From the NCBI RefSeq assembly GCF_000143415.4, contig NW_003314261.1, forward strand, positions 1,440,117 through 1,504,116: a DNA stretch of 64,000 nucleotides, read 5' to 3'. Below the pieces are notes generated by a model. The model had not been told where the DNA came from and searched no databases. It was given only the letters and a program-made list of their open reading frames with translations. Positions 12,040-42,700 of this stretch are shown here, piece after piece. The stretch's first letter is position 1, and every line of letters starts with the position of its first letter. This DNA comes from Selaginella moellendorffii (lineage: Eukaryota > Plantae > Lycopodiophyta). The translations under genes were made by a program, and so were the position numbers.

Positions 12040-12310
12040 ATGGGACCGAGTCGAAGATCGAGTCCAAGACCGACTCAGAGACCGAGTTCAAGATAGAGTC
12101 TGAGATCAAGCCGAGGCCGAATCGGAGACCGAGTTCGAGACCGAGTTCGAGACAGAGTTCGAGATCCAAATCGGGTCCGAGACCAAGTCCGAGGTCGAGT
12201 CCGAAGTCGAGTCTGAGATCGGGTCCGAGATCGAGTCCAAAATCGAGTCCGGGACCGAGTCCGAAGTCGGGTCCGAGATTGAGTCCGAGATCGATTCTGA
12301 GACTAAGTCT
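12040..12310. repeat. Degenerate hexamer array (CCGAGT/CCGAGA/TCGAGT)
   Basis: Tandem gagtcc/gagacc/gagatc units; an eroded reverse copy lies at ~43130-43330. Confidence 0.85.
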
Positions 12311-19312: not shown

Positions 19313-21447
19313 TCAAGAGGTGGTAGCTCCTCGTCCCGATCTAGCTTTTATCCTTCGTGACGGGATCACCCAATCGTCCCCGTTTTGTTCCTCCAATCCT
19401 TGAGTTGGATCCGGGCACGGCTTTGTTCGCCAGCAAGCATAGTAAATCCCAGCAAGAGCAACAGCTAGAGCAGCCATGGATCCTACAACAATACCAATTG
19501 TCTCGCCAATCCTGTAATGCTTTCCCAAAGAAGAAGTCGCAGTGACGTTACTGCTAGAACAGTTTGCTCCGCAACATATAAAGTCAGCCATTGGTGTGGA
19601 GAACTCCTGTCTTGGACAGATTGGAGTCAGCGAACCAGCAAAATCACACCCTGTGGTTGCCTCTAGAACCTGTGAAACAAAGGATTATAAATAAGATCAT
19701 TCTCTGGAAGATTGTCAAAGCTTACTGGGTGAGAACTTTTCAATGTGAGAGGTTTTTGCTCTAGAGATGGACCCGGGCTTCTCTTAGAGACAGCCTCTTG
19801 AACGACTGCAAGACCCAAGCTGTTGATGAGATCGTCGGTGACAATATCGATGCAGGCAACTCCGATCAATCGTTGGGTGGCATCAAAAGCTAGAAAACAA
19901 AGTTACAATACCCAGAAACACCGTTTTCGTGGTTTTCTTTTTACCTGGCAAGATCGAGCTTGTAACATTGCGACCACCTGAATCAGCATATAATGGCACC
20001 CACACTGGCTTTCTGTTGACACTGCTAAAACGGAGCCAAGCTAAATAGTCCAAGTAGCTGCGTATCTTCATGAGAGGATTGGTTTCATCTTTTACTGCTT
20101 CGAAGCTTATGTTGAGGCTGAATTGCATTCTCTGGAAAGTTTCATCGTTGGAAATGTAGAAACCAATCCTGTACACGAAAACGACAACGTTTTTCTCGTT
20201 AAGCTGCTTGAAGATTGGATCTAAATCCGTCAGGTTGACATGGTTGGCAAATTGGCCATCTGTTAAGAGGAGTATAACCTGGAAAATTGTTGCAATTAAC
20301 TAACGAAAGAGCTCGAGTTTACGTACATTCAAGTTTGAGCTTGAGTTGAAGAAGTCAAGAGCCCCGACGAATGCTTTCTTAATATCGGTTTGTAATTTGT
20401 CCGCTCTTGCATTGCTTATTGCGTTTTTGAGAGCTGAGATTCCAGCATGATCGAAGGATGTCTCCAAGCCCTCAAGTGAAACCGAGACCTGGAAAATGAA
20501 AACTCATAGAAATTAATAAATAATAGGATGAGATACTTACTGGTTTTCCTCCAAATGGTTTGCCTCCATTCATATCTGACACAATTACTTGGTCCCCATT
20601 GGTAAGAGTGTCGAGAAGCTCGTCCAGAATCCCCTTGGCCACTGCTAGGCGGCTTTGAGATGACAAAGGGCCGATGGAAATGCTCATGGACGACGATGTG
20701 TCTAAAACAATGTAGAGTGATTTCACCACCGCCAAGGCATGCACATACCATGGCCTTTTCCTTGGATCATAGACTTTGCATTGATGATCGTCGGTATAGT
20801 CCTAAACCATAGTACAGATGGAGATTAAATAAAATCATGGAGCTTACCCTGCCTGGATAGATGTACAAGTATCCTTCGGCGCCTCCAAAAAAAACCCAGC
20901 CATGACAGACTTTGCTGGTGCTTTTCCATGCGAGTTGAAGTTTACGATCCAGGGACTTTTGGGCACAGATAGCAATCTTAACATCAGTGTCACTCTCCAA
21001 TGCCGATGGTGAGAGCCTGTGAAAACCCCAAAGAAGTTCTGTGACAGATCAAAAATGGAGAGAACCTAATGTATGATCTCTTGCTCGAGACGCTCAAGCT
21101 CTGGCATGTCCCATTAGTCGGAGTGGAGCAATCTAGATTATGACCCACATTGACGCACGAGAGAGATTGGATCTCATCCCTGGACTGCGGTCTACAAGTG
21201 TGCCTTGAGCAATTTTCGATTGTACATTGGGATAGAGATCCTGAGACGAGAAACGATCAATCAATAATACTAGCATTCTTGTGCAGCTCTTTACTATACC
21301 GCAAGCATTCTCCCGATTTGAAATGGCCTGCCTAGCAATCTCTTGTACCTGGAACGCTGCTTCATCCAGCACGGCTTCAATGTCGCCCAGGGAATGCGCA
21401 TGAAGGTACAAAAGTGCCACAAAAACTAATCTGGAAAGAAGAACCAT
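19313..21447 (-). CDS. alpha2delta/CACHD1-like type I membrane protein: signal peptide, Cys-rich N-terminus, dCache_1 with inserted vWA, TM, short tail
   Basis: Spliced translation: GWVFFGGAEGYLYIYPG..YDPRKRPWY..LYIVLDTSSSM (MIDAS)..LLLTDG..PVWVPLYADSGG..AFDATQRLIGVACIDI..TM IGIVVGSMAALAVALAGIYYA. Confidence 0.85.
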
Positions 21448-21796: not shown

Positions 21797-24747
21797 ATGG
21801 ATCGCTCGCCAAAGCAGCGCTGCGTTGAATTCCTGATTAGTCCTCGATTTGCCTCAAATGTGCTGGTTTTCGTCCTGGCAGTGACAGCCGCAGCGTCTGG
21901 GTTCATCGCCAATCTCACGCGCAATCTCAAGGCGGCGGGCGCTCCTACAATCTTCTCGGAGATCTCCGAGTATTCCAACCTGGTAAGGTGGTTCTTTCTT
22001 TTGCATCATCGGCTCACAAAATTTGTTCTTGGCAGAGAATTTTGAGGCAGGCAATTGAGAGAGCGAAGCTCAGGGATTTTATGTCCGACCATGAGAAGTG
22101 CCTCACTCTCTTTGCACCAACAGATAGTGCTTTCGAGAGTGTTTTGCACAAAAGGCTTCTTCCGTGCGTTACAAACCACTACAACGTGAATCGTTGTTTG
22201 TCTCTCGATCAGCTCCTCTCTTCTACAAGCCTCAACAAGTTGCTTCTAAATCACGGTGGTGTTTTCTTTTCGTCCTTTCTCATGCTCAACTCTTCTTTCA
22301 GTGGTCGATGGTAATTTGTCACTGGATAGTTCTGCAAAGGAGTCATTTCTTCACTTTCTCGGAGACTCTGTGGAAAAGGTATGGATTTTTCCTTTGCTTT
22401 TGTGGTTGGAGTAAGTGTTGCTTCTGATTCTCAGCTCGTTAAGAATGAGACTGGCCATGCAAGCATTGGAAATGCTGCTGTTATCGTGGCAAACGTACGT
22501 GTTGGAAACGGAATGATGCATCTGATAGATAATGTATTGGGAAGCGTTGATCCGGAAAGTGGTTTATCCTCCGATGTCTCGCTGGATGCTGAGGCTGTTT
22601 TAAGCGCTCTCAAACTCACAGATGCCGACTTTTTCAACGTTACAAAGGTTGGGAATCAATATCTTTTATTTTCTGGCTAACGTTAACTGGTTCTACGGCA
22701 CAGAGGCAAGAAATGGCCGAAGGAGCCAAAGCCTTGAACATTCCTGGCTTTCAAAAGAATAGGAACCAGGTTGGTTATCCGGATGGCGGACTAACGAATG
22801 CCCCCGTGCTAGTCTTTGATCCAAGTATGAACGAGGCAGACTTTACGGGTCCGGACACGAAGTTTTCCTACCCTTCACTTGCTGCAGGCATTACTCGGCC
22901 TTCTACAGACGAGGACCTCGCTTTCATGACCGTAAGTTCTTGCAAGAATGTTCTGGTTTCCATCTAACAGCGTGTTTTCTTTTCTTTTTGTACAAGATTC
23001 TCGAGCTCGGGGCACTCCTCAAGAGCAAGAAGGTGACCTCAGTGGAACTTGTGAAAGTTTTTTCTGAACGCCTGAAGAGGTAATCCGAACTCTTCTACGA
23101 AGGCTAGACAATGAAGTTTCTTTTGCTACACAGGTATGACAGTACTCTCAAAGCTGTTGTAACATATACAGAGGAGCTAGCACAAGAGCAAGCGTTAGCG
23201 GCTGACAAACTACTACAGCAAGGAACTTATCTGGGTTAGCAGTTCTTTTGCGCATGGAAGAAATAGTTAACTAACTCGTTGGCAGGACCATTGCACGGAA
23301 TTCCTTATGGTTTGAAGGACATAATTGCGGTTCCAGGGTACAGAACCACTTGGGGAAGCACAAGTTTTAAGGACCAGTTCTTCAACGAGGAAGCATTTGT
23401 TTATACCAGGTTTGTGATCAGTCTTGCATTGCTGTTAAAGCAAAGAGTTTTGGCAGACTCAAAGAGGCTGGAGCTGTGCTAATAGCGAAACTGGCTACTG
23501 GTTCCCTTGCTTACGACGATGTCTGGTTTGGAGGTCGGACAAGAAATCCCTGGAATATTGAGGAATTTTCAACTGGATCTTCTTGCGGACCTGCCGCGGC
23601 CACATCTGCTGGTTCGTTGAGTTCGGTGATTTTGCTGGTTTTAGTTTTTTTTGCTTTGCAGGAACCATTCCTTTTGCTATTGGATCGGAGACAGCAGGCT
23701 CAATATCTTATCCTGCTGCTCGAACTGGAGTGACGGCCTTCAGGCCAACATTCGGAATGGTGAGCCGATGGCAAATTATGAGCCTATCAGAGAGCCTGGT
23801 AAGTATACGTGCTTGTGTGTGTATGTTTTTTTTGTTTTCGGTATTCTAAGTTGGTGTTTGGCAGGATAAGATCGGTCCGTTTAGTAGAAGCATCGAGGAT
23901 TGTACTATCGTGCTAGATGTACTACGTGGAAAAGATCCTCGCGATCTCTCCTCGAAGAACATCAAGCTAAAGGATCCGTTCTCGATTGATGTGAAGAAGC
24001 TGACTGTCGGCTATTTGCCGGATGCAGAGATGGAAGTAAGTGTTCCAAAGCGTTTCGTTAAAAACTTTCTATGTTTCCCAGGTGGTGCGTATCTTAAAAG
24101 AGCAAGGTGTGAAGATGGTACCATTCGATCTAAAATACAGCGTCGACTCCGCGCAGCAGATTCTGAACTTCACCATGGATGTCGATATGCTGGCACATTT
24201 CGATCACTGGCAGCGCGCTGGCCTGGACGACGCGTACGAAGCACAGGATCAGTGGCCAGTTGAGCTCCGACGAGCGCGTCTCATCTCGGCAGTCGATTAC
24301 ATCCAGGTAGACAAGAACTCCCCTTCGTTCTTCTCGTTTTCTTGTTGTAGCTTCTAACGTATGAACTTTCGCAGGCACAGCGAGCACGTCACAAGCTCAT
24401 CTCCGAGGTGCTAGAAGCGCTGAAAGGCATCGACGCATTTGTAGGAAACGCTACAGACTGGGAGAAAGTTGCCGTGGGCAATCTCGTGGGAATGCCAGTG
24501 GCCATCATCCCAGCCGGCTTGAAAAGCATTCAAAATCCACCGCCGGAAGGAACTCGGCGGAGAACCACAGTGACCGCGGGGATCTATGCCCGACCATACG
24601 GCGACTCGGAGGTAAGCAAACAGATCTTTCCAGAGACCATTTATTTATATCGTGAGAGCTTCACAGGTTTTGGCACTGGCAATGGCCTTCCAGAAAGTCA
24701 CAAAGCATCACCTCCAGCGCCCACCGGTCGACAATGTCAAGCCATAG
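21797..24747 (+). CDS. Fasciclin (FAS1)-amidase signature fusion protein; amidase part resembles Arabidopsis At5g07360
   Basis: Hydrophobic N-terminal segment; FAS1 motifs LTLFAPTDSAF and NVRVGNGMMHLIDNVL; amidase motifs GPLHGIPYGLKD, TGSSCG, GSETAGSISYPA. Many short GT-AG introns; ends RPPVDNVKP*. An alternative upstream ATG at 21703 is possible. Confidence 0.85.
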
Positions 24748-36733: not shown

Positions 36734-38891
36734 TTACAAGTTTTCTTTTTGAGGAGATCTCATTGGAACCACCCAGTCCAGTTCTTGAGGTTGGTCATTA
36801 TCACTTCCAGTTGCTGGAGCTTTGTGGCACTTGCGACACAAAAACGCGGCAGAAACGAAGAAGGCACAAGTGGTGACCACTCCGCCCACAGCAATACCAG
36901 CACTTACTTTTCTCGTTAGCTTCTTTGCGGGATGAGGAGGAGAAGCACTGGCTGTAACAGCACAAGCTCCACAACATATAAACTCCCTCATGGACGTGGA
37001 AAAGTCGCCTCTTGGACAGATTGGAGCCAGGCTGCCATGGAAGTCACAGCTGATAGTCGCATTGGCGAGCTGCAAAATCAAATTTCTCTCAACTGAAAAA
37101 CAAAACAAAAGTTCCAAAAATTTGTACGTAACTGTCAGAGCGAGAGGAAGAGGCTTTTGCTGTGAAGGATCAAAGTATCGTTTAGATATAGCTTTCTCAA
37201 CTGTAGGCTGGCCAAGCTCCGCGATTAGCCCATCAGCAAGAACATCTATACGTGCAACTCCAATCAACTGTTGATTTGCATCAAAAGCTGCATGAAATTA
37301 AAATAATTACTAAGAAGAAGCAGAGTAATAAATAATAGTACTATACAAACCTGGAAAGATGGAAGTTGTCACATTGCCAAGGCCAACAGAATCGGTATAC
37401 AAACTCGCCCAAACTGGTTTCTTGTTGACAGCAACAAAGCGAAGCCATGCAATGTAGTCGAAATAGCTGTGGACCTTGAGCAGCGGGTTTTTGTCGTCGT
37501 TGATGACCTCGTAGCTCATGTTGAGGCTGCTCTGCATGTGCTGGAAAGTGGCATCGTTGGTTGTGAAGGACCCGATTCTGTAGACAAACACTACAACACC
37601 TCTCGCGTTCAGCTGTGCCAAAACTGGGCTCAGTTGGGTGAAGTTGAAATTGCCAGGGGTGACAAACTGTCCATCTGTGAAGAGGATTATGACCTGGGAT
37701 TTGGAAAGTTGAAGAAACCAATGTGATTTCTTGTGATTATCACACGAAAAGCATCTTACATTCAAGTTGGAGCTGGTGTTGAAGAAATCAAGTGCTGCTT
37801 GCAGCCCGTTCTTTATGTTACTGGCTGAGTTTGTAACACTTGTGTTGCTTATGGAATCTTTGAGGGAAGAGATTCCAGCCAGATCCAAAGAGGTTTCCTG
37901 GACGCCAAGAACTACGGAAACCTGGATTTCAGAACCTCATGATCAGAAGTTATCCTAGTCTCTGATGAAAAACATAACTGGAGCTCCGATTTTCTCACCA
38001 CCAATCGTTGACACAGCCACTTGATCTCCATTCGTGAAGGTGTTTAGCAGCCTTTTAATGATGTTATTTGCAACATTAAAGCGGGTTTGGGACGATAAAA
38101 CTCCAGTGGGATTGCTCATGGAAGCGGAGGTGTCCAAGAGAATGTAGAGCGATTTTTGGACCGCCAAAGCATTGAGAAACCATGGCCTGAGTCTTGGATC
38201 GTAAATATCACACTGCCAACTGTCGACATAGTCCTGTCAATATGAACACATTTATAAGCTCTCGCTTGCAGGGAAGAAATGCTTAGTGTGCACTTACCCG
38301 GCCTGGGTAAACATACAAGTATCCTTCAATCCCTCCAAAGAATGCCCAGCCAAGGGAGAACTTCCTCGTGTTATCCCAGGCCTGTTGTAGCTTCTTATCT
38401 AGAGATTTCTGAGCACACAAGACCGTCTGAAAATCTCGATCTTTCTCCGGAGCATCGGGTGGGACTCTGGATGATCATATCAACATCTCAAGTCAAAGCT
38501 GTAAATTGACAAACTAAATACCTGAGATATGTTCTTTGACTTGAAACGCTTAAGCTCTGGCAAGTTCCATTTGCCTGTCCATTGTGGAATACTCCAAAGC
38601 AAGAGAGCTTTTGGATCTCATCCTTGGATTGCGGCCAGCAAGGGCGCCTTGTGCAAGTGTTGAGTGAGCAATCCGCTAGACTTCCTGTGACAATGCTCTA
38701 CAAAGTTGTTTGAGTCTGAGCTTCAAGAGCTTACCACAAGTACTGGCTCGATTTAAGATTGCTTGATTCGCGATTGCCTGGACCTGGAAGTCGGTCTCGT
38801 CCAGCACCGTTTTGATGTTATCTTGAGCGTTTGCTAGCAGCAAAGACAAGACTCCTAAAAAGGCGGATCTAAGCAAGAGATAGTCCTGCAT
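36734..38891 (-). CDS. Second alpha2delta/CACHD1-like dCache_1-vWA membrane protein
   Basis: GWAFFGGIEGYLYVYPG..YDPRLRPWF..ILLDTSASM..ILFTDG..PVWASLYTDSVG..AFDANQQLIGVARIDV..TM..DWVVPMRSP; same intron layout as 19313-21447. Confidence 0.85.
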
Positions 38892-39099
38892 TCGCTCAAA
38901 CCTGCAAAAGTGGTGGCGTTGATTTTCTCAAGCTCCTGGAAGCAAGCGAACCAACATCTTGTTGATTTTTATGCGACCAGATCAAAGCTAGCCCAAACCG
39001 TGTGGACTTACGTATTGCCAACATCACCCATTCTCATAGGAGACGAGGCAACTTCGGGTTGGAGCTTCAATTGACTTCAACAGACGTCCATTGATTTTT

Positions 39100-39745
39100 A
39101 AAGGGACGAAGTCATTGTTGCTAATAAGTTTAATCGCAGGCTCGGCCAAGTTTCTGTTGTACAGGAAGCAAACGAAGCAAGACTCTCTTTCAACCAGTTA
39201 TGTTTGGTGACCAATTTTCTTTTCTGTGGCGATTTTGGCAGATCCGGACCAGTCTTGTTCAGCCCCGATGGGAGTTTCACTCGTGGTAGGCGAGGGGAAT
39301 TTGCAGCACTTACAAGAAAACTACAGCAGAAGCAAGAACTGCCGCTCCCACGCAAATACCAGCAATGCCACCAACTGCCAATAATCGCCACACATGAAAT
39401 ATGTGGTCAGTGTCAAAAAAATCTCTTTGCAGGCAAAACAGTTGATAATAGTTCCATTCGAGACCTGCTGGTAATGTCAGCGACAAGTTCTCTGGTTGGG
39501 TGAGAGGGAGAGGCTTTACATTCTCTAAAGAATAGAAGCTCCGTGTAGACACTTCTTCTTGAACAACAGCTCTGCTGAGCTTGCTGATAAGCTTCTCAGT
39601 AGTAATGTCAATGCATGCAACTCTAATCAAATGCTGATTTGCATCGAATGCTACAGCAGTAACCGCTGCAGTTTGATCACATATCTTGGTGACGATCAAG
39701 TGAGAGCCAATGCCTTCCACTGGGATAAAGGTATTGTCGCTTAAA
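39100..39745 (-). pseudogene. 3' fragment of a third alpha2delta-like gene
   Basis: VAFDANQHLIRVACIDI..VQEEVSTRSF..KPLPL and a TM-like segment; frameshifted; 5' part replaced by retroelement sequence. Confidence 0.7.
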
Positions 39746-39749
39746 TGAA

Positions 39750-42700
39750 GACCAGGTTTGCCAATGCTTAGTTGATAACACTCTTTTTATTGCCCAAAAG
39801 ATTAGTATAACTAGAGTCTAGGAGCTATGCTATAATTGCCTTTGCATTGTAAAACTCCTCATCAGCCTTGCTAGGTTTTGGAGCAATGGAATCTTGAGTT
39901 AGTGGCCCATCTCCAAGCAACAAGCATATTGATTCTTGGCAAGTCTGAGAGAGTTTTTCCCTTTTGCATATAGTTTTGCCACCTTGGCATCATTTGGAGC
40001 TTTTGAAGTGTATATAGCCTATAACATTTCCACTCTCTTGCTCCATATAGCCTCAATGTTTTGCAGACTCCTCGAAGCATTTGCCCAAGTCATCCTTGGT
40101 TGGAGAACCAAAATTGCAATTGCATTCTTCTAGCTAGCCAATAGGGACTTGTAGAGCTGCATATGTGAGATAGTGCTTCACCCTAGCAGCTGCAGGTTGT
40201 GTGAAGAAGCTCTTGAGTTTAGATATTACTATTTTTCTCTAGCCTAAGGGGGTGAATGTGTTAAGAGGGAAGGCTCTCGACAGTGGAGAGAACACTTTTT
40301 TATACTTTGAAATCCTGCTTGAATATCTCTTTTATGTGAACTCATTGCCTAGAAAATGAGGAAGAAGGGGAATATACCCTTGCACCTCACACTCCTAGAA
40401 TATTCCAACAGTGGAATATTTTAAGGAATCTCGCTCAACTCTAAGCCATGGATGTTGAAGACATCCATCTAACTCTCATACGGTCTTTTTGATAAGTATT
40501 TGGTTGAGGTGGTGAATATTAGAGTGGTTTAGGCAAGATATAATATGATTAAAACACTTTTGTGGGATTTATGTGACAACACTTTTGTAGGGTTTATTAT
40601 ACAATAATTTTACAGAGTTTATGCAACAATAATATAATGACATATAACTATGAAAACTCTCTTTTATATATAACATGGCCTCAAGACATGCCTCTCTTTA
40701 TTGTACTAGCAGTATGCTACAAATACATATGCATGGGAAGGGTGCTATGAGACATATGTCCAACCTCTAGCATGACTGTGAGGTGCAACATGACCTTGTG
40801 TTCAAACTCAAAACCTTTTGTACATGCAATTGCAAAGGTGTAGTAACTCCTAGAAAAAATAAACCACTAAATGCATTGACAATCAAGAAAGACCTTGCAT
40901 GCGTACCTTATTAAGAGGGACCAAACTAGAATTTTGGTACACTTTATTATTATTTAGTGTGACAATGTCTTTCAAGGTGAAAGGCACACCTACACTACAC
41001 TAAACATGTATTAGAAGTTGTAAATAAAATTCATGTCATCATCTTGTTTTGCACTTATTTTTTTAAAAATATTTTGCTAAGACAAGTGTAGTGCAATATC
41101 CATGTGTCCTTGTCAATGGGGCTTGTCATATTTATCCTCTAAAAAACTATAGAGATGTTAGTTTTGACATGCTAAAACATTGGTATAGAGTAATTCAAAG
41201 AGATTGGGTAATAAGAGGGAGGATTATGAAACTATAGTCTAATTTTGTGCCATGCAGATCCATAGTCTACAAATCTGCACCTTGAAATCATTATTGGTTG
41301 TAAGCTTTATATCTTATCCATCATTTCTAGCCTCGTATTTCTCTAGTGTGAGTGTGCCATCATTGTACCAATATGATGGACTTGAGCTGAACTTGAACTT
41401 GAGAGGGAACATATGACTTAAACTCCATAAAAAACTTGAGTTATCTTGAAATCAATTGAGATACACCATACTTACTTGTTCTCCATCTGTATAGCACATA
41501 CAATTTCTTAGGATACAAAGAGTCCTTGAAGATGTATACTCCTGAATCCCATGGTGTCGTGAAATCAAGAGGAGCATACAATCTCCACTAACAGTGATAT
41601 TGTTGATGCTATGGAATCCACTCCTCATTGCTGTGGCTAATCCCCTTCAACTGGGATCATTGTTTCCAACTTCCCATCAAGCCATGCAAGTGTATTATTG
41701 CTATGCCAATTCCACAACCTTATACCAATATAGATATACCTTTGTCTCTATCTATCTAAAGTTCATGACCAAAGGTGAACTACAAATCTGGGCTAAAGCT
41801 AGATTTCCATAGCAAGCTAGTATGATGTAATTTGTTATGCCCTTCAAAGCACTTCAAACATCAATTAATACCTTAAATATCAATTTGTAGTGTTCCGAGT
41901 GCCTTGATCGTGGTGAAGCCATGACCAAGGCAAGAAAAGAATCAGCCAACACAACCATATTATAAAAATTGGAACTTCAGTATATTGTCAATGTGTTCCA
42001 TTGCCAATTGAACCTATGTGAACAATCTAAAGGTGGAGATACTTGTGAAGAATAATATCCTTTACATGTAATATAAGGGTTCTTGTCAAAATACATAATA
42101 AAGTGTCCTTTCCTTTGATCTCTTCATACCCAAAACTCCAAAACCTAAAATCAATCAAAACTCTTGAACCATTGGATCTTTATAAAATTTCATTAGTGTA
42201 TTTTGCTAGTTTGTCCAAACCCTAGCCACCACCAAGGATAAGGACATCTTGATCTCTTGAATCTTGGCTTTAAATCACTTGTTCTATGTTTATTGTAAGT
42301 GATTAATTTTTTTATTCTACTTTAGTCACTTAATGATGCCTTTAACCACTTGGAGGAGTATCATTCACAACCTTTATAAATCTTTATTCCAAGTTGGGAA
42401 ACTTGTTAACCCTCAAAGGTAATCTTAAAGCCACTTTGACTTTGCACTTAATTTACATGTTTGATTCTACTTCAAACACCCAAAGATACTATCAATATCT
42501 CAACTCATTATATTAAGGTTATGTTTGTTCTTTTATATCTCATTGGTAGTCTAAAACCACCTATACCATAGTCCTATCTTTCCAAAACTAGGTCATCTGT
42601 CCATATATAGTTATCCTATAACCACACTTTAACATCTTTAAGACACCCCTAGATATAAAGAACACCATCTCTCAATATCATTTTTTTAATCCTCACCAAA

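What the first reader, a model, noticed from the sequence alone, without database searches (positions are those of the whole stretch)
19313..21447. Plant alpha2delta/CACHD1-like amino-acid sensor without a kinase
Seen in sequence: YDPRKRPWY, then a vWA domain with intact MIDAS (DTSSS..T..TDG), then PLYAD and IGVACID. This is the split YxxxxRxW...Y...D dCache_1AA ligand motif. A single TM and a ~37-aa tail follow. Established: this architecture is that of animal alpha2delta/CACHD1 calcium-channel subunits, whose Cache pocket binds amino acids and gabapentinoids; the family has been reported as absent from flowering plants. Inference: an extracellular amino-acid receptor-like protein that needs a partner channel or kinase. 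A role in sperm chemotaxis or nutrient sensing is speculation.
Basis: partly seen in the sequence, partly recalled or inferred. Interest (0 to 1): 0.8.

Follow-up and report, generated by a model that had tools for sequence, protein, structure and literature searches.

The report
Spikemoss alpha2delta-like VWA-Cache membrane protein
This is a real, intact and transcribed Selaginella gene for a cell-surface protein built like the front half of animal calcium-channel alpha2delta subunits, with the amino-acid-binding pocket residues kept, but the gene already carries that name in RefSeq and the family was reported in non-flowering plants in 2022, so it is an untested member of a known family, not a discovery.

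Summary
On the minus strand, 21447 to 19313, lies an 8-exon gene with seven GT-AG introns of 46-59 nt. Spliced transcript contigs from four studies confirm it. It encodes 589 aa. The product is identical to RefSeq XP_024533612.1 of Selaginella moellendorffii, auto-named "voltage-dependent calcium channel subunit alpha-2/delta-4".

The order of parts is:
- signal peptide, long helix and a Cys-rich insert;
- Cache strands with YDPRKRPWY;
- a VWA domain with a complete MIDAS;
- the remaining Cache strands (PLYAD, IGVACID);
- a short Cys stalk, one TM helix and a 38-aa tail.

No kinase is present. Homology to alpha2delta-1 is strong (profile E 1.8e-42; structure Z about 30 over about 410 residues). 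R, W, the third Y and D of the amino-acid motif are invariant in every relative where the position is present.

It is only the front half of alpha2delta. The membrane-proximal Cache module, the second dCache_1 and the delta/GPI part are absent.

Relatives are kinase-fused receptor kinases in mosses and kinase-less proteins in Selaginella (a tandem family) and Psilotum. Ginkgo has a fragment.

Gumerov et al. 2022 already reported such proteins in Archaeplastida but not angiosperms. The scan had also flagged paralogues and the allele elsewhere in this genome. Ligand binding and any partner remain untested.

The parts
19313..21447 (-). Whole CDS, start codon to stop codon: 8 exons, 1770 nt, 589 aa. 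Exons in + coordinates: 21300-21447, 21066-21240, 20848-21016, 20541-20801, 20327-20488, 19945-20278, 19726-19889, 19313-19669.
   Evidence: Spliced contigs with CT..AC (GT..AG on the minus strand) joints. Translation is intact and identical to P0031 / XP_024533612.1.
21385..21447 (-). Signal peptide, residues 1-21 (hydrophobic core LVFVALLYL)
   Evidence: By inspection of the translation. No signal-peptide predictor was available.
21307..21384 (-). Long N-terminal helix (alpha1 of the Cache domain), residues 22-47
   Evidence: AF2 helix 2-46, pLDDT 84-93. The structural alignments to alpha2delta-1 start at model residues 1-14.
20995..21306 (-). Cys-rich insert between helix and Cache sheet, residues 48-115, 7 Cys; spans introns 1 and 2
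   Evidence: Cys positions. Low pLDDT. The Cys columns are conserved across land-plant relatives.
20733..20994 (-). N-terminal part of the Cache (distal PDC) module, residues 116-187, including YDPRKRPWY at 20745-20771 (Y175, R180, W182, Y183)
   Evidence: Aligned with alpha2delta-1 YDVRRRPWY. The profile also hits PctA at E 6.7e-10 over this part.
20039..20732 (-). VWA domain, residues 188-385, with complete MIDAS: D198-x-S200-x-S202 (20688-20702), T285 (20387-20389), D312 in TDG (20255-20263)
   Evidence: Pfam VWA_2 2.7e-7 and VWA 8.7e-6. MIDAS table. AF2 pLDDT 80-92.
19783..20038 (-). C-terminal part of the Cache module plus the following helix, residues 386-452: W398, Y402, D404 (PLYAD 19982-19996) and D431 (IGVACID 19846-19866)
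   Evidence: Sub-threshold Pfam dCache_1 hit to profile positions 116-157. The profile aligns with alpha2delta-1 WTNVYLDA and GVMGVDV, and with Mlp-type bacterial dCache sensors. AF2 strands 396-402, 408-417 and 423-432.
19499..19782 (-). Ser/Pro-rich linker and small Cys stalk, residues 453-528 (C479, C489, C503, C504, C508); not a Cache module
   Evidence: pLDDT below 35 in the full model. Folded alone it gives no beta sheet. The Cys pattern is conserved across land plants. No Pfam hit.
19430..19498 (-). Transmembrane helix, residues 529-551
   Evidence: Highest hydropathy window of the protein. AF2 helix 529-551.
19316..19429 (-). Cytoplasmic tail, 38 aa, with DWVIPSRR; the Selaginella paralogues share DW[VL]xPxR. 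No kinase.
   Evidence: No kinase motifs downstream.
36737..38900 (-). Second, intact paralogue in the window (= P0015, SELMODRAFT_402207), about 57% identical, same layout
   Evidence: tblastn; ORFs; motif table.
39313..39945 (-). Truncated third copy: only the last Cache strand, a degenerate stalk and a TM helix
   Evidence: tblastn; ORF 39310-39720.

Best explanation
This is a type I cell-surface receptor-like protein of the alpha2delta/CACHD1 superfamily, in its minimal form. It has one PAS-like Cache (distal, 'first PDC') module with a VWA domain inserted into it, held on a short Cys stalk above a single TM helix and a 38-aa tail.

Shown here:
- The gene is intact, spliced and transcribed.
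- The ectodomain is homologous and structurally similar to the first Cache-VWA unit of alpha2delta-1.
- The residues that hold the alpha-carboxylate (Y175, R180, W182) and the alpha-amino group (Y402, D431, plus D404) of a bound amino acid in alpha2delta-1 and bacterial dCache_1AA sensors are all present. R, W, Y402 and D431 are invariant across relatives that share only about 25-30% identity.
- The five MIDAS residues of the VWA domain are complete.

Inferred:
- The Cache pocket binds a free amino acid or a similar small amino-carboxylate. Five of the 13 pocket-lining positions differ from alpha2delta-1, so side-chain preference should differ.
- The MIDAS face binds an acidic residue of a partner protein.
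- Because there is no cytoplasmic output domain, the signal must pass through a partner, either another receptor kinase or a channel. In mosses the same ectodomain is fused directly to a receptor kinase.
For: Gene model and expression. Sequence homology: the allelic protein P0016 matches alpha2delta-1 at E 1.8e-11. The plant ectodomain profile matches alpha2delta-1 at E 1.8e-42, CACHD1 at 2.5e-20, PctA at 6.7e-10 and Mlp-type amino-acid sensors at about 2e-4, with motif residues in register. Structure: AF2 core pLDDT 80-93. Foldseek gives alpha2delta-1 at E 4e-21. VIA-align gives Z 29-30 over 402-420 residues, against Z of at most 20 over about 175 residues for plain VWA domains. Motif and MIDAS conservation table. 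Motif definition, and loss of binding on R or D mutation: Gumerov 2022. Pocket residue list of alpha2delta-1: mapped by hand through the alignments. Moss relatives carry a kinase after the TM helix, which shows that this ectodomain is used as a sensor input.
Against: No binding or partner data exist for any plant member. I could not measure pocket geometry, because the tools return no coordinates. The membrane-proximal Cache module that relays the signal in bacterial dCache receptors is absent. In alpha2delta-1 the bound amino acid may act as a structural or trafficking cofactor, not as a signal. The first motif Y is F in mosses, so not every motif position is fixed. The AF2 alignment had only 18 sequences.
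Confidence: 0.6

Rival explanations
1. It is a true auxiliary subunit, alpha2delta-like in function, of the four-domain Cav/NALCN-type channel that earlier scan notes report in this genome. It would bind the channel's extracellular loops through its MIDAS and promote trafficking or gating. Amino-acid binding would be secondary.
For: The closest solved structures are alpha2delta-1 in Cav complexes. The MIDAS is perfect in this gene only; paralogues have T to S, and mosses and the fern have DxGxS. By general knowledge from the alpha2delta field, a perfect MIDAS is needed for Cav enhancement. Earlier notes s1-355612 and s1-380501 report an intact four-domain channel in Selaginella; I did not check them. 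The land-plant relatives I found are all from lineages with swimming sperm.
Against: The second dCache_1 and the delta part of animal alpha2delta are absent. Moss orthologues signal through their own kinase, which argues for a receptor and not a channel-subunit role. CACHD1 shows that this fold also serves non-channel partners, as in the FZD5/LRP6 complexes. No co-expression or interaction data exist.
Confidence: 0.15
2. It is a metal-dependent adhesion or matrix-binding surface protein. The VWA MIDAS would bind a cell-wall or secreted protein ligand, and the Cache pocket would be structural, holding a constitutive amino acid, with no signalling role.
For: Complete MIDAS. No cytoplasmic signalling domain. 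A heavily N-glycosylated, Cys-rich ectodomain with 8 sequons. A tandem multi-copy family, as is usual for surface proteins.
Against: The most strictly conserved residues across the family are the Cache pocket residues, not the MIDAS, which is degenerate in mosses and the fern. Fusion to a kinase in mosses implies signalling.
Confidence: 0.15
3. It is a decaying or non-functional duplicate in a tandem array.
For: A truncated copy lies in the same window. Intron 6 (49 nt) is retained in some transcript contigs, which would shift the frame.
Against: The 589-codon frame is intact. Correctly spliced transcripts occur in several studies. The two alleles differ at only 8 residues, none in a motif. 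All pocket and MIDAS residues are kept.
Confidence: 0.03

Closest known systems
Animal voltage-gated calcium channel alpha2delta subunits (alpha2delta-1, e.g. PDB 7vfs, 8fd7, 6jp8)
   Same: An N-terminal helix and a first Cache distal module split by a VWA insertion at the same place. The motif YDxRxRPWY ... WxxxY.D ... GVxGxD is kept. The MIDAS is DxSxS..T..D. Identity is about 21% over about 410 structurally aligned residues.
   Different: [quoted passage not shown] It has a Cys-rich insert after helix 1, a real TM helix and a 38-aa tail. Five of 13 pocket-lining residues differ: V209 to F, Y219 to I, W225 to Y, A455 to S, L456 to G.
CACHD1 (PDB 8s7c, 9eq6)
   Same: A type I TM protein with VWA inside Cache and a cytoplasmic tail in place of a GPI anchor. 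Z 24.6; profile E 2.5e-20.
   Different: CACHD1 has two dCache_1 domains and keeps its amino-acid motif in the second one (Gumerov 2022). Here there is one module, and the motif sits in the VWA-split one.
Single-dCache_1 (VWA-inserted) dCache_1AA proteins of diverse eukaryotes, including Archaeplastida (Gumerov et al. 2022, PNAS, PMC8915833)
   Same: This is the group the gene belongs to. It has the split AA_motif with 28 residues between Y and D (the paper gives 27-34). The group is absent from angiosperms.
   Different: The paper describes these as having one dCache_1. In the plant proteins I find only the distal module and no proximal one. I could not read the paper's Dataset S3, so I cannot say whether this exact gene is listed there.
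Bryophyte VWA receptor-like kinases (Lehti-Shiu and Shiu 2012 as cited in metaRLK 2.0, PMC13174206; e.g. Ceratodon P0020, Physcomitrium P0037)
   Same: The same ectodomain at 28-30% identity, including the Cys insert and Cys stalk, and one land-plant clade with 100/99 support.
   Different: The moss proteins carry an RLK/Pelle-type kinase after the TM helix and have a degenerate MIDAS (DxGxS). The Selaginella and Psilotum proteins have no kinase.
Bacterial dCache_1AA chemoreceptors (PctA 5ltx/5t65, Mlp24/Mlp37)
   Same: [quoted passage not shown] The profile hits both halves separately.
   Different: The bacterial sensors have no VWA insertion, do have a proximal module, and have a cytoplasmic signalling domain.

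Membership tests
alpha2delta (CACNA2D) calcium-channel subunits | First Cache module split by a VWA domain (VWA_N + VWA), collinear with alpha2delta-1 | tested here: met
   Profile E 1.8e-42, aligned to chain positions 132-474 of 6jp8_F. Z 29-30.
alpha2delta (CACNA2D) calcium-channel subunits | Second dCache_1 / VGCC_alpha2 region (PF08473) | tested here: not met
   No Pfam hit. Only 78 residues lie between the post-Cache helix and the TM helix, with no sheet predicted.
alpha2delta (CACNA2D) calcium-channel subunits | Cleavage into alpha2 and delta, and a GPI-type C-terminal anchor | tested here: not met
   The TM helix 529-551 is followed by a 38-aa hydrophilic tail, which is not a GPI signal shape. 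Cleavage itself cannot be tested here.
alpha2delta (CACNA2D) calcium-channel subunits | Physical association with a four-domain channel alpha1 subunit | not testable with these tools
   Only earlier scan notes say such a channel exists in this genome.
dCache_1AA amino-acid sensor domain (Gumerov 2022) | AA_motif: Y, R, W for the carboxylate, and Y then D (27-34 residues later) for the amino group | tested here: met
   Y175, R180, W182, Y402 and D431, with 28 residues between Y402 and D431. Definition.
dCache_1AA amino-acid sensor domain (Gumerov 2022) | Double (distal plus proximal) Cache architecture | tested here: not met
   Distal module only. The Pfam dCache_1 match covers profile positions 116-157 of 240. 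The fern relative passes the threshold of the 'first PDC' model PF22673 only. The C-terminal 158 aa fold to helices only.
dCache_1AA amino-acid sensor domain (Gumerov 2022) | Binds amino acids | not testable with these tools
   Needs ITC or thermal shift. No model coordinates are returned, so docking was not possible.
VWA domain with functional MIDAS | DxSxS, T and D metal-coordinating residues in a Rossmann-like VWA fold | tested here: met
   D198, S200, S202, T285 and D312. Pfam VWA and VWA_2 are above threshold. Z about 20 to many VWA structures.
Plant receptor-like protein (RLP: an RLK-type ectodomain without a kinase) | Signal peptide, ectodomain shared with an RLK family, one TM helix, short tail, no kinase | tested here: met
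   Layout. RLK relatives in mosses. No kinase motifs in the window near the gene.

The most novel reading that the evidence does not exclude
The minimal VWA-Cache protein is the ancestral partner of the four-domain Cav/NALCN-like channel that Selaginella is said to keep. The pair would act in swimming sperm, so that an extracellular amino acid tunes calcium entry during chemotaxis. That would make the alpha2delta-channel partnership older than animals, and lost in plants together with motile sperm.
Probability: 0.08. Interest if true: 0.8.

Novelty: new member of a known kind. Interest (0 to 1): 0.38.

Why it matters
No plant member of this family has been studied at the bench, and plants have few known receptors for extracellular amino acids. 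The Selaginella proteins are small (589 aa), lack the second Cache domain and keep every ligand-coordinating residue. That makes them a convenient minimal system for two questions: whether the 'universal' amino-acid pocket works in plants, and what an alpha2delta-like ectodomain does without the rest of alpha2delta.

The contrast between kinase-fused moss forms and kinase-less lycophyte and fern forms gives a natural test of how the signal leaves the ectodomain.

The discovery value is limited. The gene is already named alpha-2/delta-4 in RefSeq, and the family's presence in non-flowering Archaeplastida, with the same motif argument, was published in 2022.

Tried and rejected
1. Pfam on single exons gave only weak VWA hits. 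The full-length allele was needed.
2. phmmer of exon 6 against the PDB found nothing relevant. The one large HMMER search, also run with exon 6, gave only 13 hits. It says little about how wide the family is.
3. The word-index searches scored only 8000 candidates each. Absence of a Selaginella kinase-fused copy or of seed-plant copies cannot be concluded from them.
4. A kinase exon downstream was rejected. No kinase motifs occur on the minus strand down to 14000, and the next gene there is a different one.
5. A hidden proximal Cache module in residues 453-528 was rejected.
6. Pseudogene, contamination or animal-derived DNA were rejected. The evidence is short plant-type introns, tandem paralogues, two alleles, and a land-plant clade with moss and fern relatives.
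7. The bacterial promoter and terminator scan is irrelevant for a eukaryotic gene and showed no enrichment.
8. The supplement of Gumerov 2022 (Dataset S3) is not held, so I could not check whether this gene is listed.
9. The full alignment A2 used as a PDB profile was swamped by kinase hits. I repeated the search with ectodomains only.

Full report
**1. The gene.** Contigs from four public runs of four studies lie on the stretch with seven skips. Each skip is bounded by CT..AC on the + strand, which is GT..AG on the minus strand. The introns are 19670-19725, 19890-19944, 20279-20326, 20489-20540, 20802-20847, 21017-21065 and 21241-21299. Because these contigs are spliced, the runs hold RNA and the gene is transcribed. 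Joining the eight exons gives a 1770-nt open frame of 589 codons.

The product is identical, residue for residue, to P0031 = XP_024533612.1, [quoted passage not shown]. A second RefSeq protein, P0016 (588 aa, on another scaffold), differs at 8 positions, none in a motif, and is the other haplotype. So the window is S. moellendorffii, and the gene already carries an alpha2delta name from automatic annotation. No paper in the library mentions its accession or locus tags.

**2. Anatomy.**
- Residues 1-21: signal peptide (by inspection).
- Residues 22-47: long helix.
- Residues 48-115: Cys-rich insert with low model confidence.
- Residues 116-187: first Cache strands, ending in YDPRKRPWY.
- Residues 188-385: VWA domain with D198-x-S200-x-S202, T285 and D312.
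- Residues 386-452: three more Cache strands carrying W398, Y402, D404 and D431, then a helix.
- Residues 453-528: Ser/Pro-rich linker and a small stalk with five Cys.
- Residues 529-551: TM helix.
- Residues 552-589: tail.

Eight N-glycosylation sequons lie in the ectodomain. No kinase motif is found downstream on the same strand.

**3. Homology.** Exon 4 alone finds alpha2delta-1 as its best PDB match (E 6e-4), plus a bacterial amino-acid chemoreceptor. The full-length allele gives E 1.8e-11 to alpha2delta-1 over residues 144-422.

A profile of 16 ectodomains (Selaginella, Psilotum, mosses and two unplaced eukaryotes) gives these matches:
- alpha2delta-1, E 1.8e-42;
- CACHD1, E 2.5e-20;
- PctA, E 6.7e-10, on the part before the VWA;
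- Mlp-type sensors, E about 2e-4, on the part after the VWA.

In that alignment YDVRRRPWY, DVSGS, FTDGG, WTNVYLDA and GVMGVDV of alpha2delta-1 pair with the plant motifs.

Pfam places VWA and VWA_2 above threshold. dCache_1 is only sub-threshold, on profile positions 116-157 of 240. The fern relative passes the threshold of PF22673, the "first PDC" model.

**4. Structure.** An AF2 model of the allele (18-sequence alignment) has pLDDT 80-93 in the VWA domain and Cache sheet, and below 35 in the stalk and tail. Foldseek ranks alpha2delta-1 first (E 4e-21, about 460 columns), then CACHD1 (1e-12), then plain VWA proteins (1e-7). VIA-align gives these scores:

| Match | Z | Aligned residues |
|---|---|---|
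| alpha2delta-1 | 29-30 | 402-420 (rmsd about 4 A) |
| CACHD1 | 24.6 | 385 |
| Isolated VWA domains | at most 20 | about 175 |

About 230 residues outside the VWA domain therefore also match. The ESM Atlas search returns alpha2delta clusters and a diatom cluster of 699-aa VWA proteins.

After the last Cache strand there is one helix and then disorder. The last 158 residues, folded on their own, give only that helix and the TM helix. The stalk aligns across land plants as a short Cys pattern, not as a PAS-like module. The protein therefore has one Cache module, not a double Cache, and no second dCache_1.

**5. Pocket and MIDAS conservation.** In a 19-protein alignment, R180, W182, Y402 and D431 are identical in every sequence where the position is present. 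The first Y is Y in Selaginella, Psilotum and an unplaced full-length dCache protein, and F in mosses.

Gumerov et al. define the motif as Y, R and W for the carboxylate and Y and D for the amino group. They show that R to A and D to A or N abolish binding.

The gabapentin and L-Leu pocket of human alpha2delta-1 is lined by 13 residues. I mapped them by hand through the printed alignments:
- Seven are identical: W207, Y238, R243, W245, Y452, D454, D493.
- One is conservative: T463 to S.
- Five differ: V209 to F, Y219 to I, W225 to Y, A455 to S, L456 to G.

The polar cage is kept and the side-chain wall is changed.

The MIDAS is complete only in this gene. The Selaginella paralogues have S in place of T. 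The mosses and Psilotum have DxGxS.

**6. Relatives and evolution.** Selaginella has at least four full-length paralogues: P0031, P0015, P0001 and P0014, all on one 6.95-Mb scaffold. One paralogue (36737-38900) and a truncated copy (39313-39945) lie in this window.

| Lineage | Proteins | Form |
|---|---|---|
| Psilotum nudum | P0036, 590 aa | kinase-less |
| Mosses (Ceratodon, Sphagnum, Physcomitrium) | 780-1015 aa | same ectodomain fused to a receptor kinase |
| Ginkgo | P0003, 141 aa | fragment with TDG and the W..Y part |

A maximum-likelihood tree of the ectodomains gives one land-plant clade (100/99). It contains three unresolved branches: Psilotum, Selaginella and the mosses. The outgroups are kinase-less. 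By parsimony, kinase fusion is a gain on the moss branch. A gain at the base followed by loss in vascular plants is not excluded.

**7. What is already known.** Moran and Zakon 2014 called alpha2delta metazoan-specific. Gumerov et al. 2022 then reported several things:
- dCache_1AA proteins with a VWA insertion occur in nearly all eukaryotic supergroups, including Archaeplastida.
- None were found in angiosperms.
- Single-dCache_1 forms occur in diverse eukaryotes.
- Kinase fusions occur in some Streptophyta.

RLK surveys list a bryophyte-only VWA-RLK family. Earlier notes of this scan flagged the neighbouring tandem array and the allelic copy in the same genome.

What I add is modest. This gene is confirmed as expressed and intact. 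The plant proteins lack the proximal module. The vascular-plant members are kinase-less. This copy alone has a perfect MIDAS.

**8. Mechanism.** The most likely reading is a surface receptor-like protein whose Cache pocket binds an amino acid or similar ligand and whose MIDAS face holds a partner. Output would go through that partner, because the tail has no catalytic domain.

The rivals are a channel auxiliary subunit, a MIDAS-dependent adhesion protein and a decaying duplicate. They are weighed in the fields above. None of the functional steps has been tested in any plant.

Noticed in passing
window 36737-38900 (-): A second full-length paralogue (= P0015, SELMODRAFT_402207) with the same layout. 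The GenBank model of 563 aa omits the TM helix that the window ORF 36734-37267 clearly encodes.
   Followed up: partly
window 39313-39945 (-): A truncated third copy holding only the last Cache strand, a Cys-less stalk and a TM helix. The RefSeq model P0017 (made on the other haplotype) joins the matching fragment to the N-terminal exons of the neighbouring paralogue, which looks like a chimeric gene model.
   Followed up: partly
window 21017-21065 (intron 6 of the gene): This 49-nt intron is removed in one run's contig (X4). It is retained in contigs of X10 and X2, and another contig in X1 shows a different junction near 21055. Retention would shift the frame.
   Followed up: no
window 21988-22680 (+): A divergently transcribed neighbour encodes a fasciclin (FAS1) domain protein (Pfam PF02469, E 4e-5 and 5e-3 on two exon pieces). 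Its first ORF piece begins about 540 nt upstream of the alpha2delta-like gene's ATG.
   Followed up: partly
window 19316-19429 (-), and the tails of P0001, P0014, P0015: The short cytoplasmic tails of the Selaginella paralogues share DW[VL]xPxR about 20 residues after the TM helix, although the tails are otherwise diverged. The motif is absent in Psilotum and the mosses. It is unexplained; it could be a sorting or partner-binding motif.
   Followed up: no
P0006 (481 aa, ENA metagenome contig; cluster mate P0055, 1020 aa): This protein consists of about 40-aa tandem repeats, each containing RVWLPLYASGIG. It matched the VWVPLYAD strand of exon 6 seven times. Its origin and meaning are unknown.
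   Followed up: no
window 12200-12270 (-): A low-complexity DFGLGPGL-type repeat in one reading frame turned up in the kinase-motif scan. It is probably a simple repeat.
   Followed up: no
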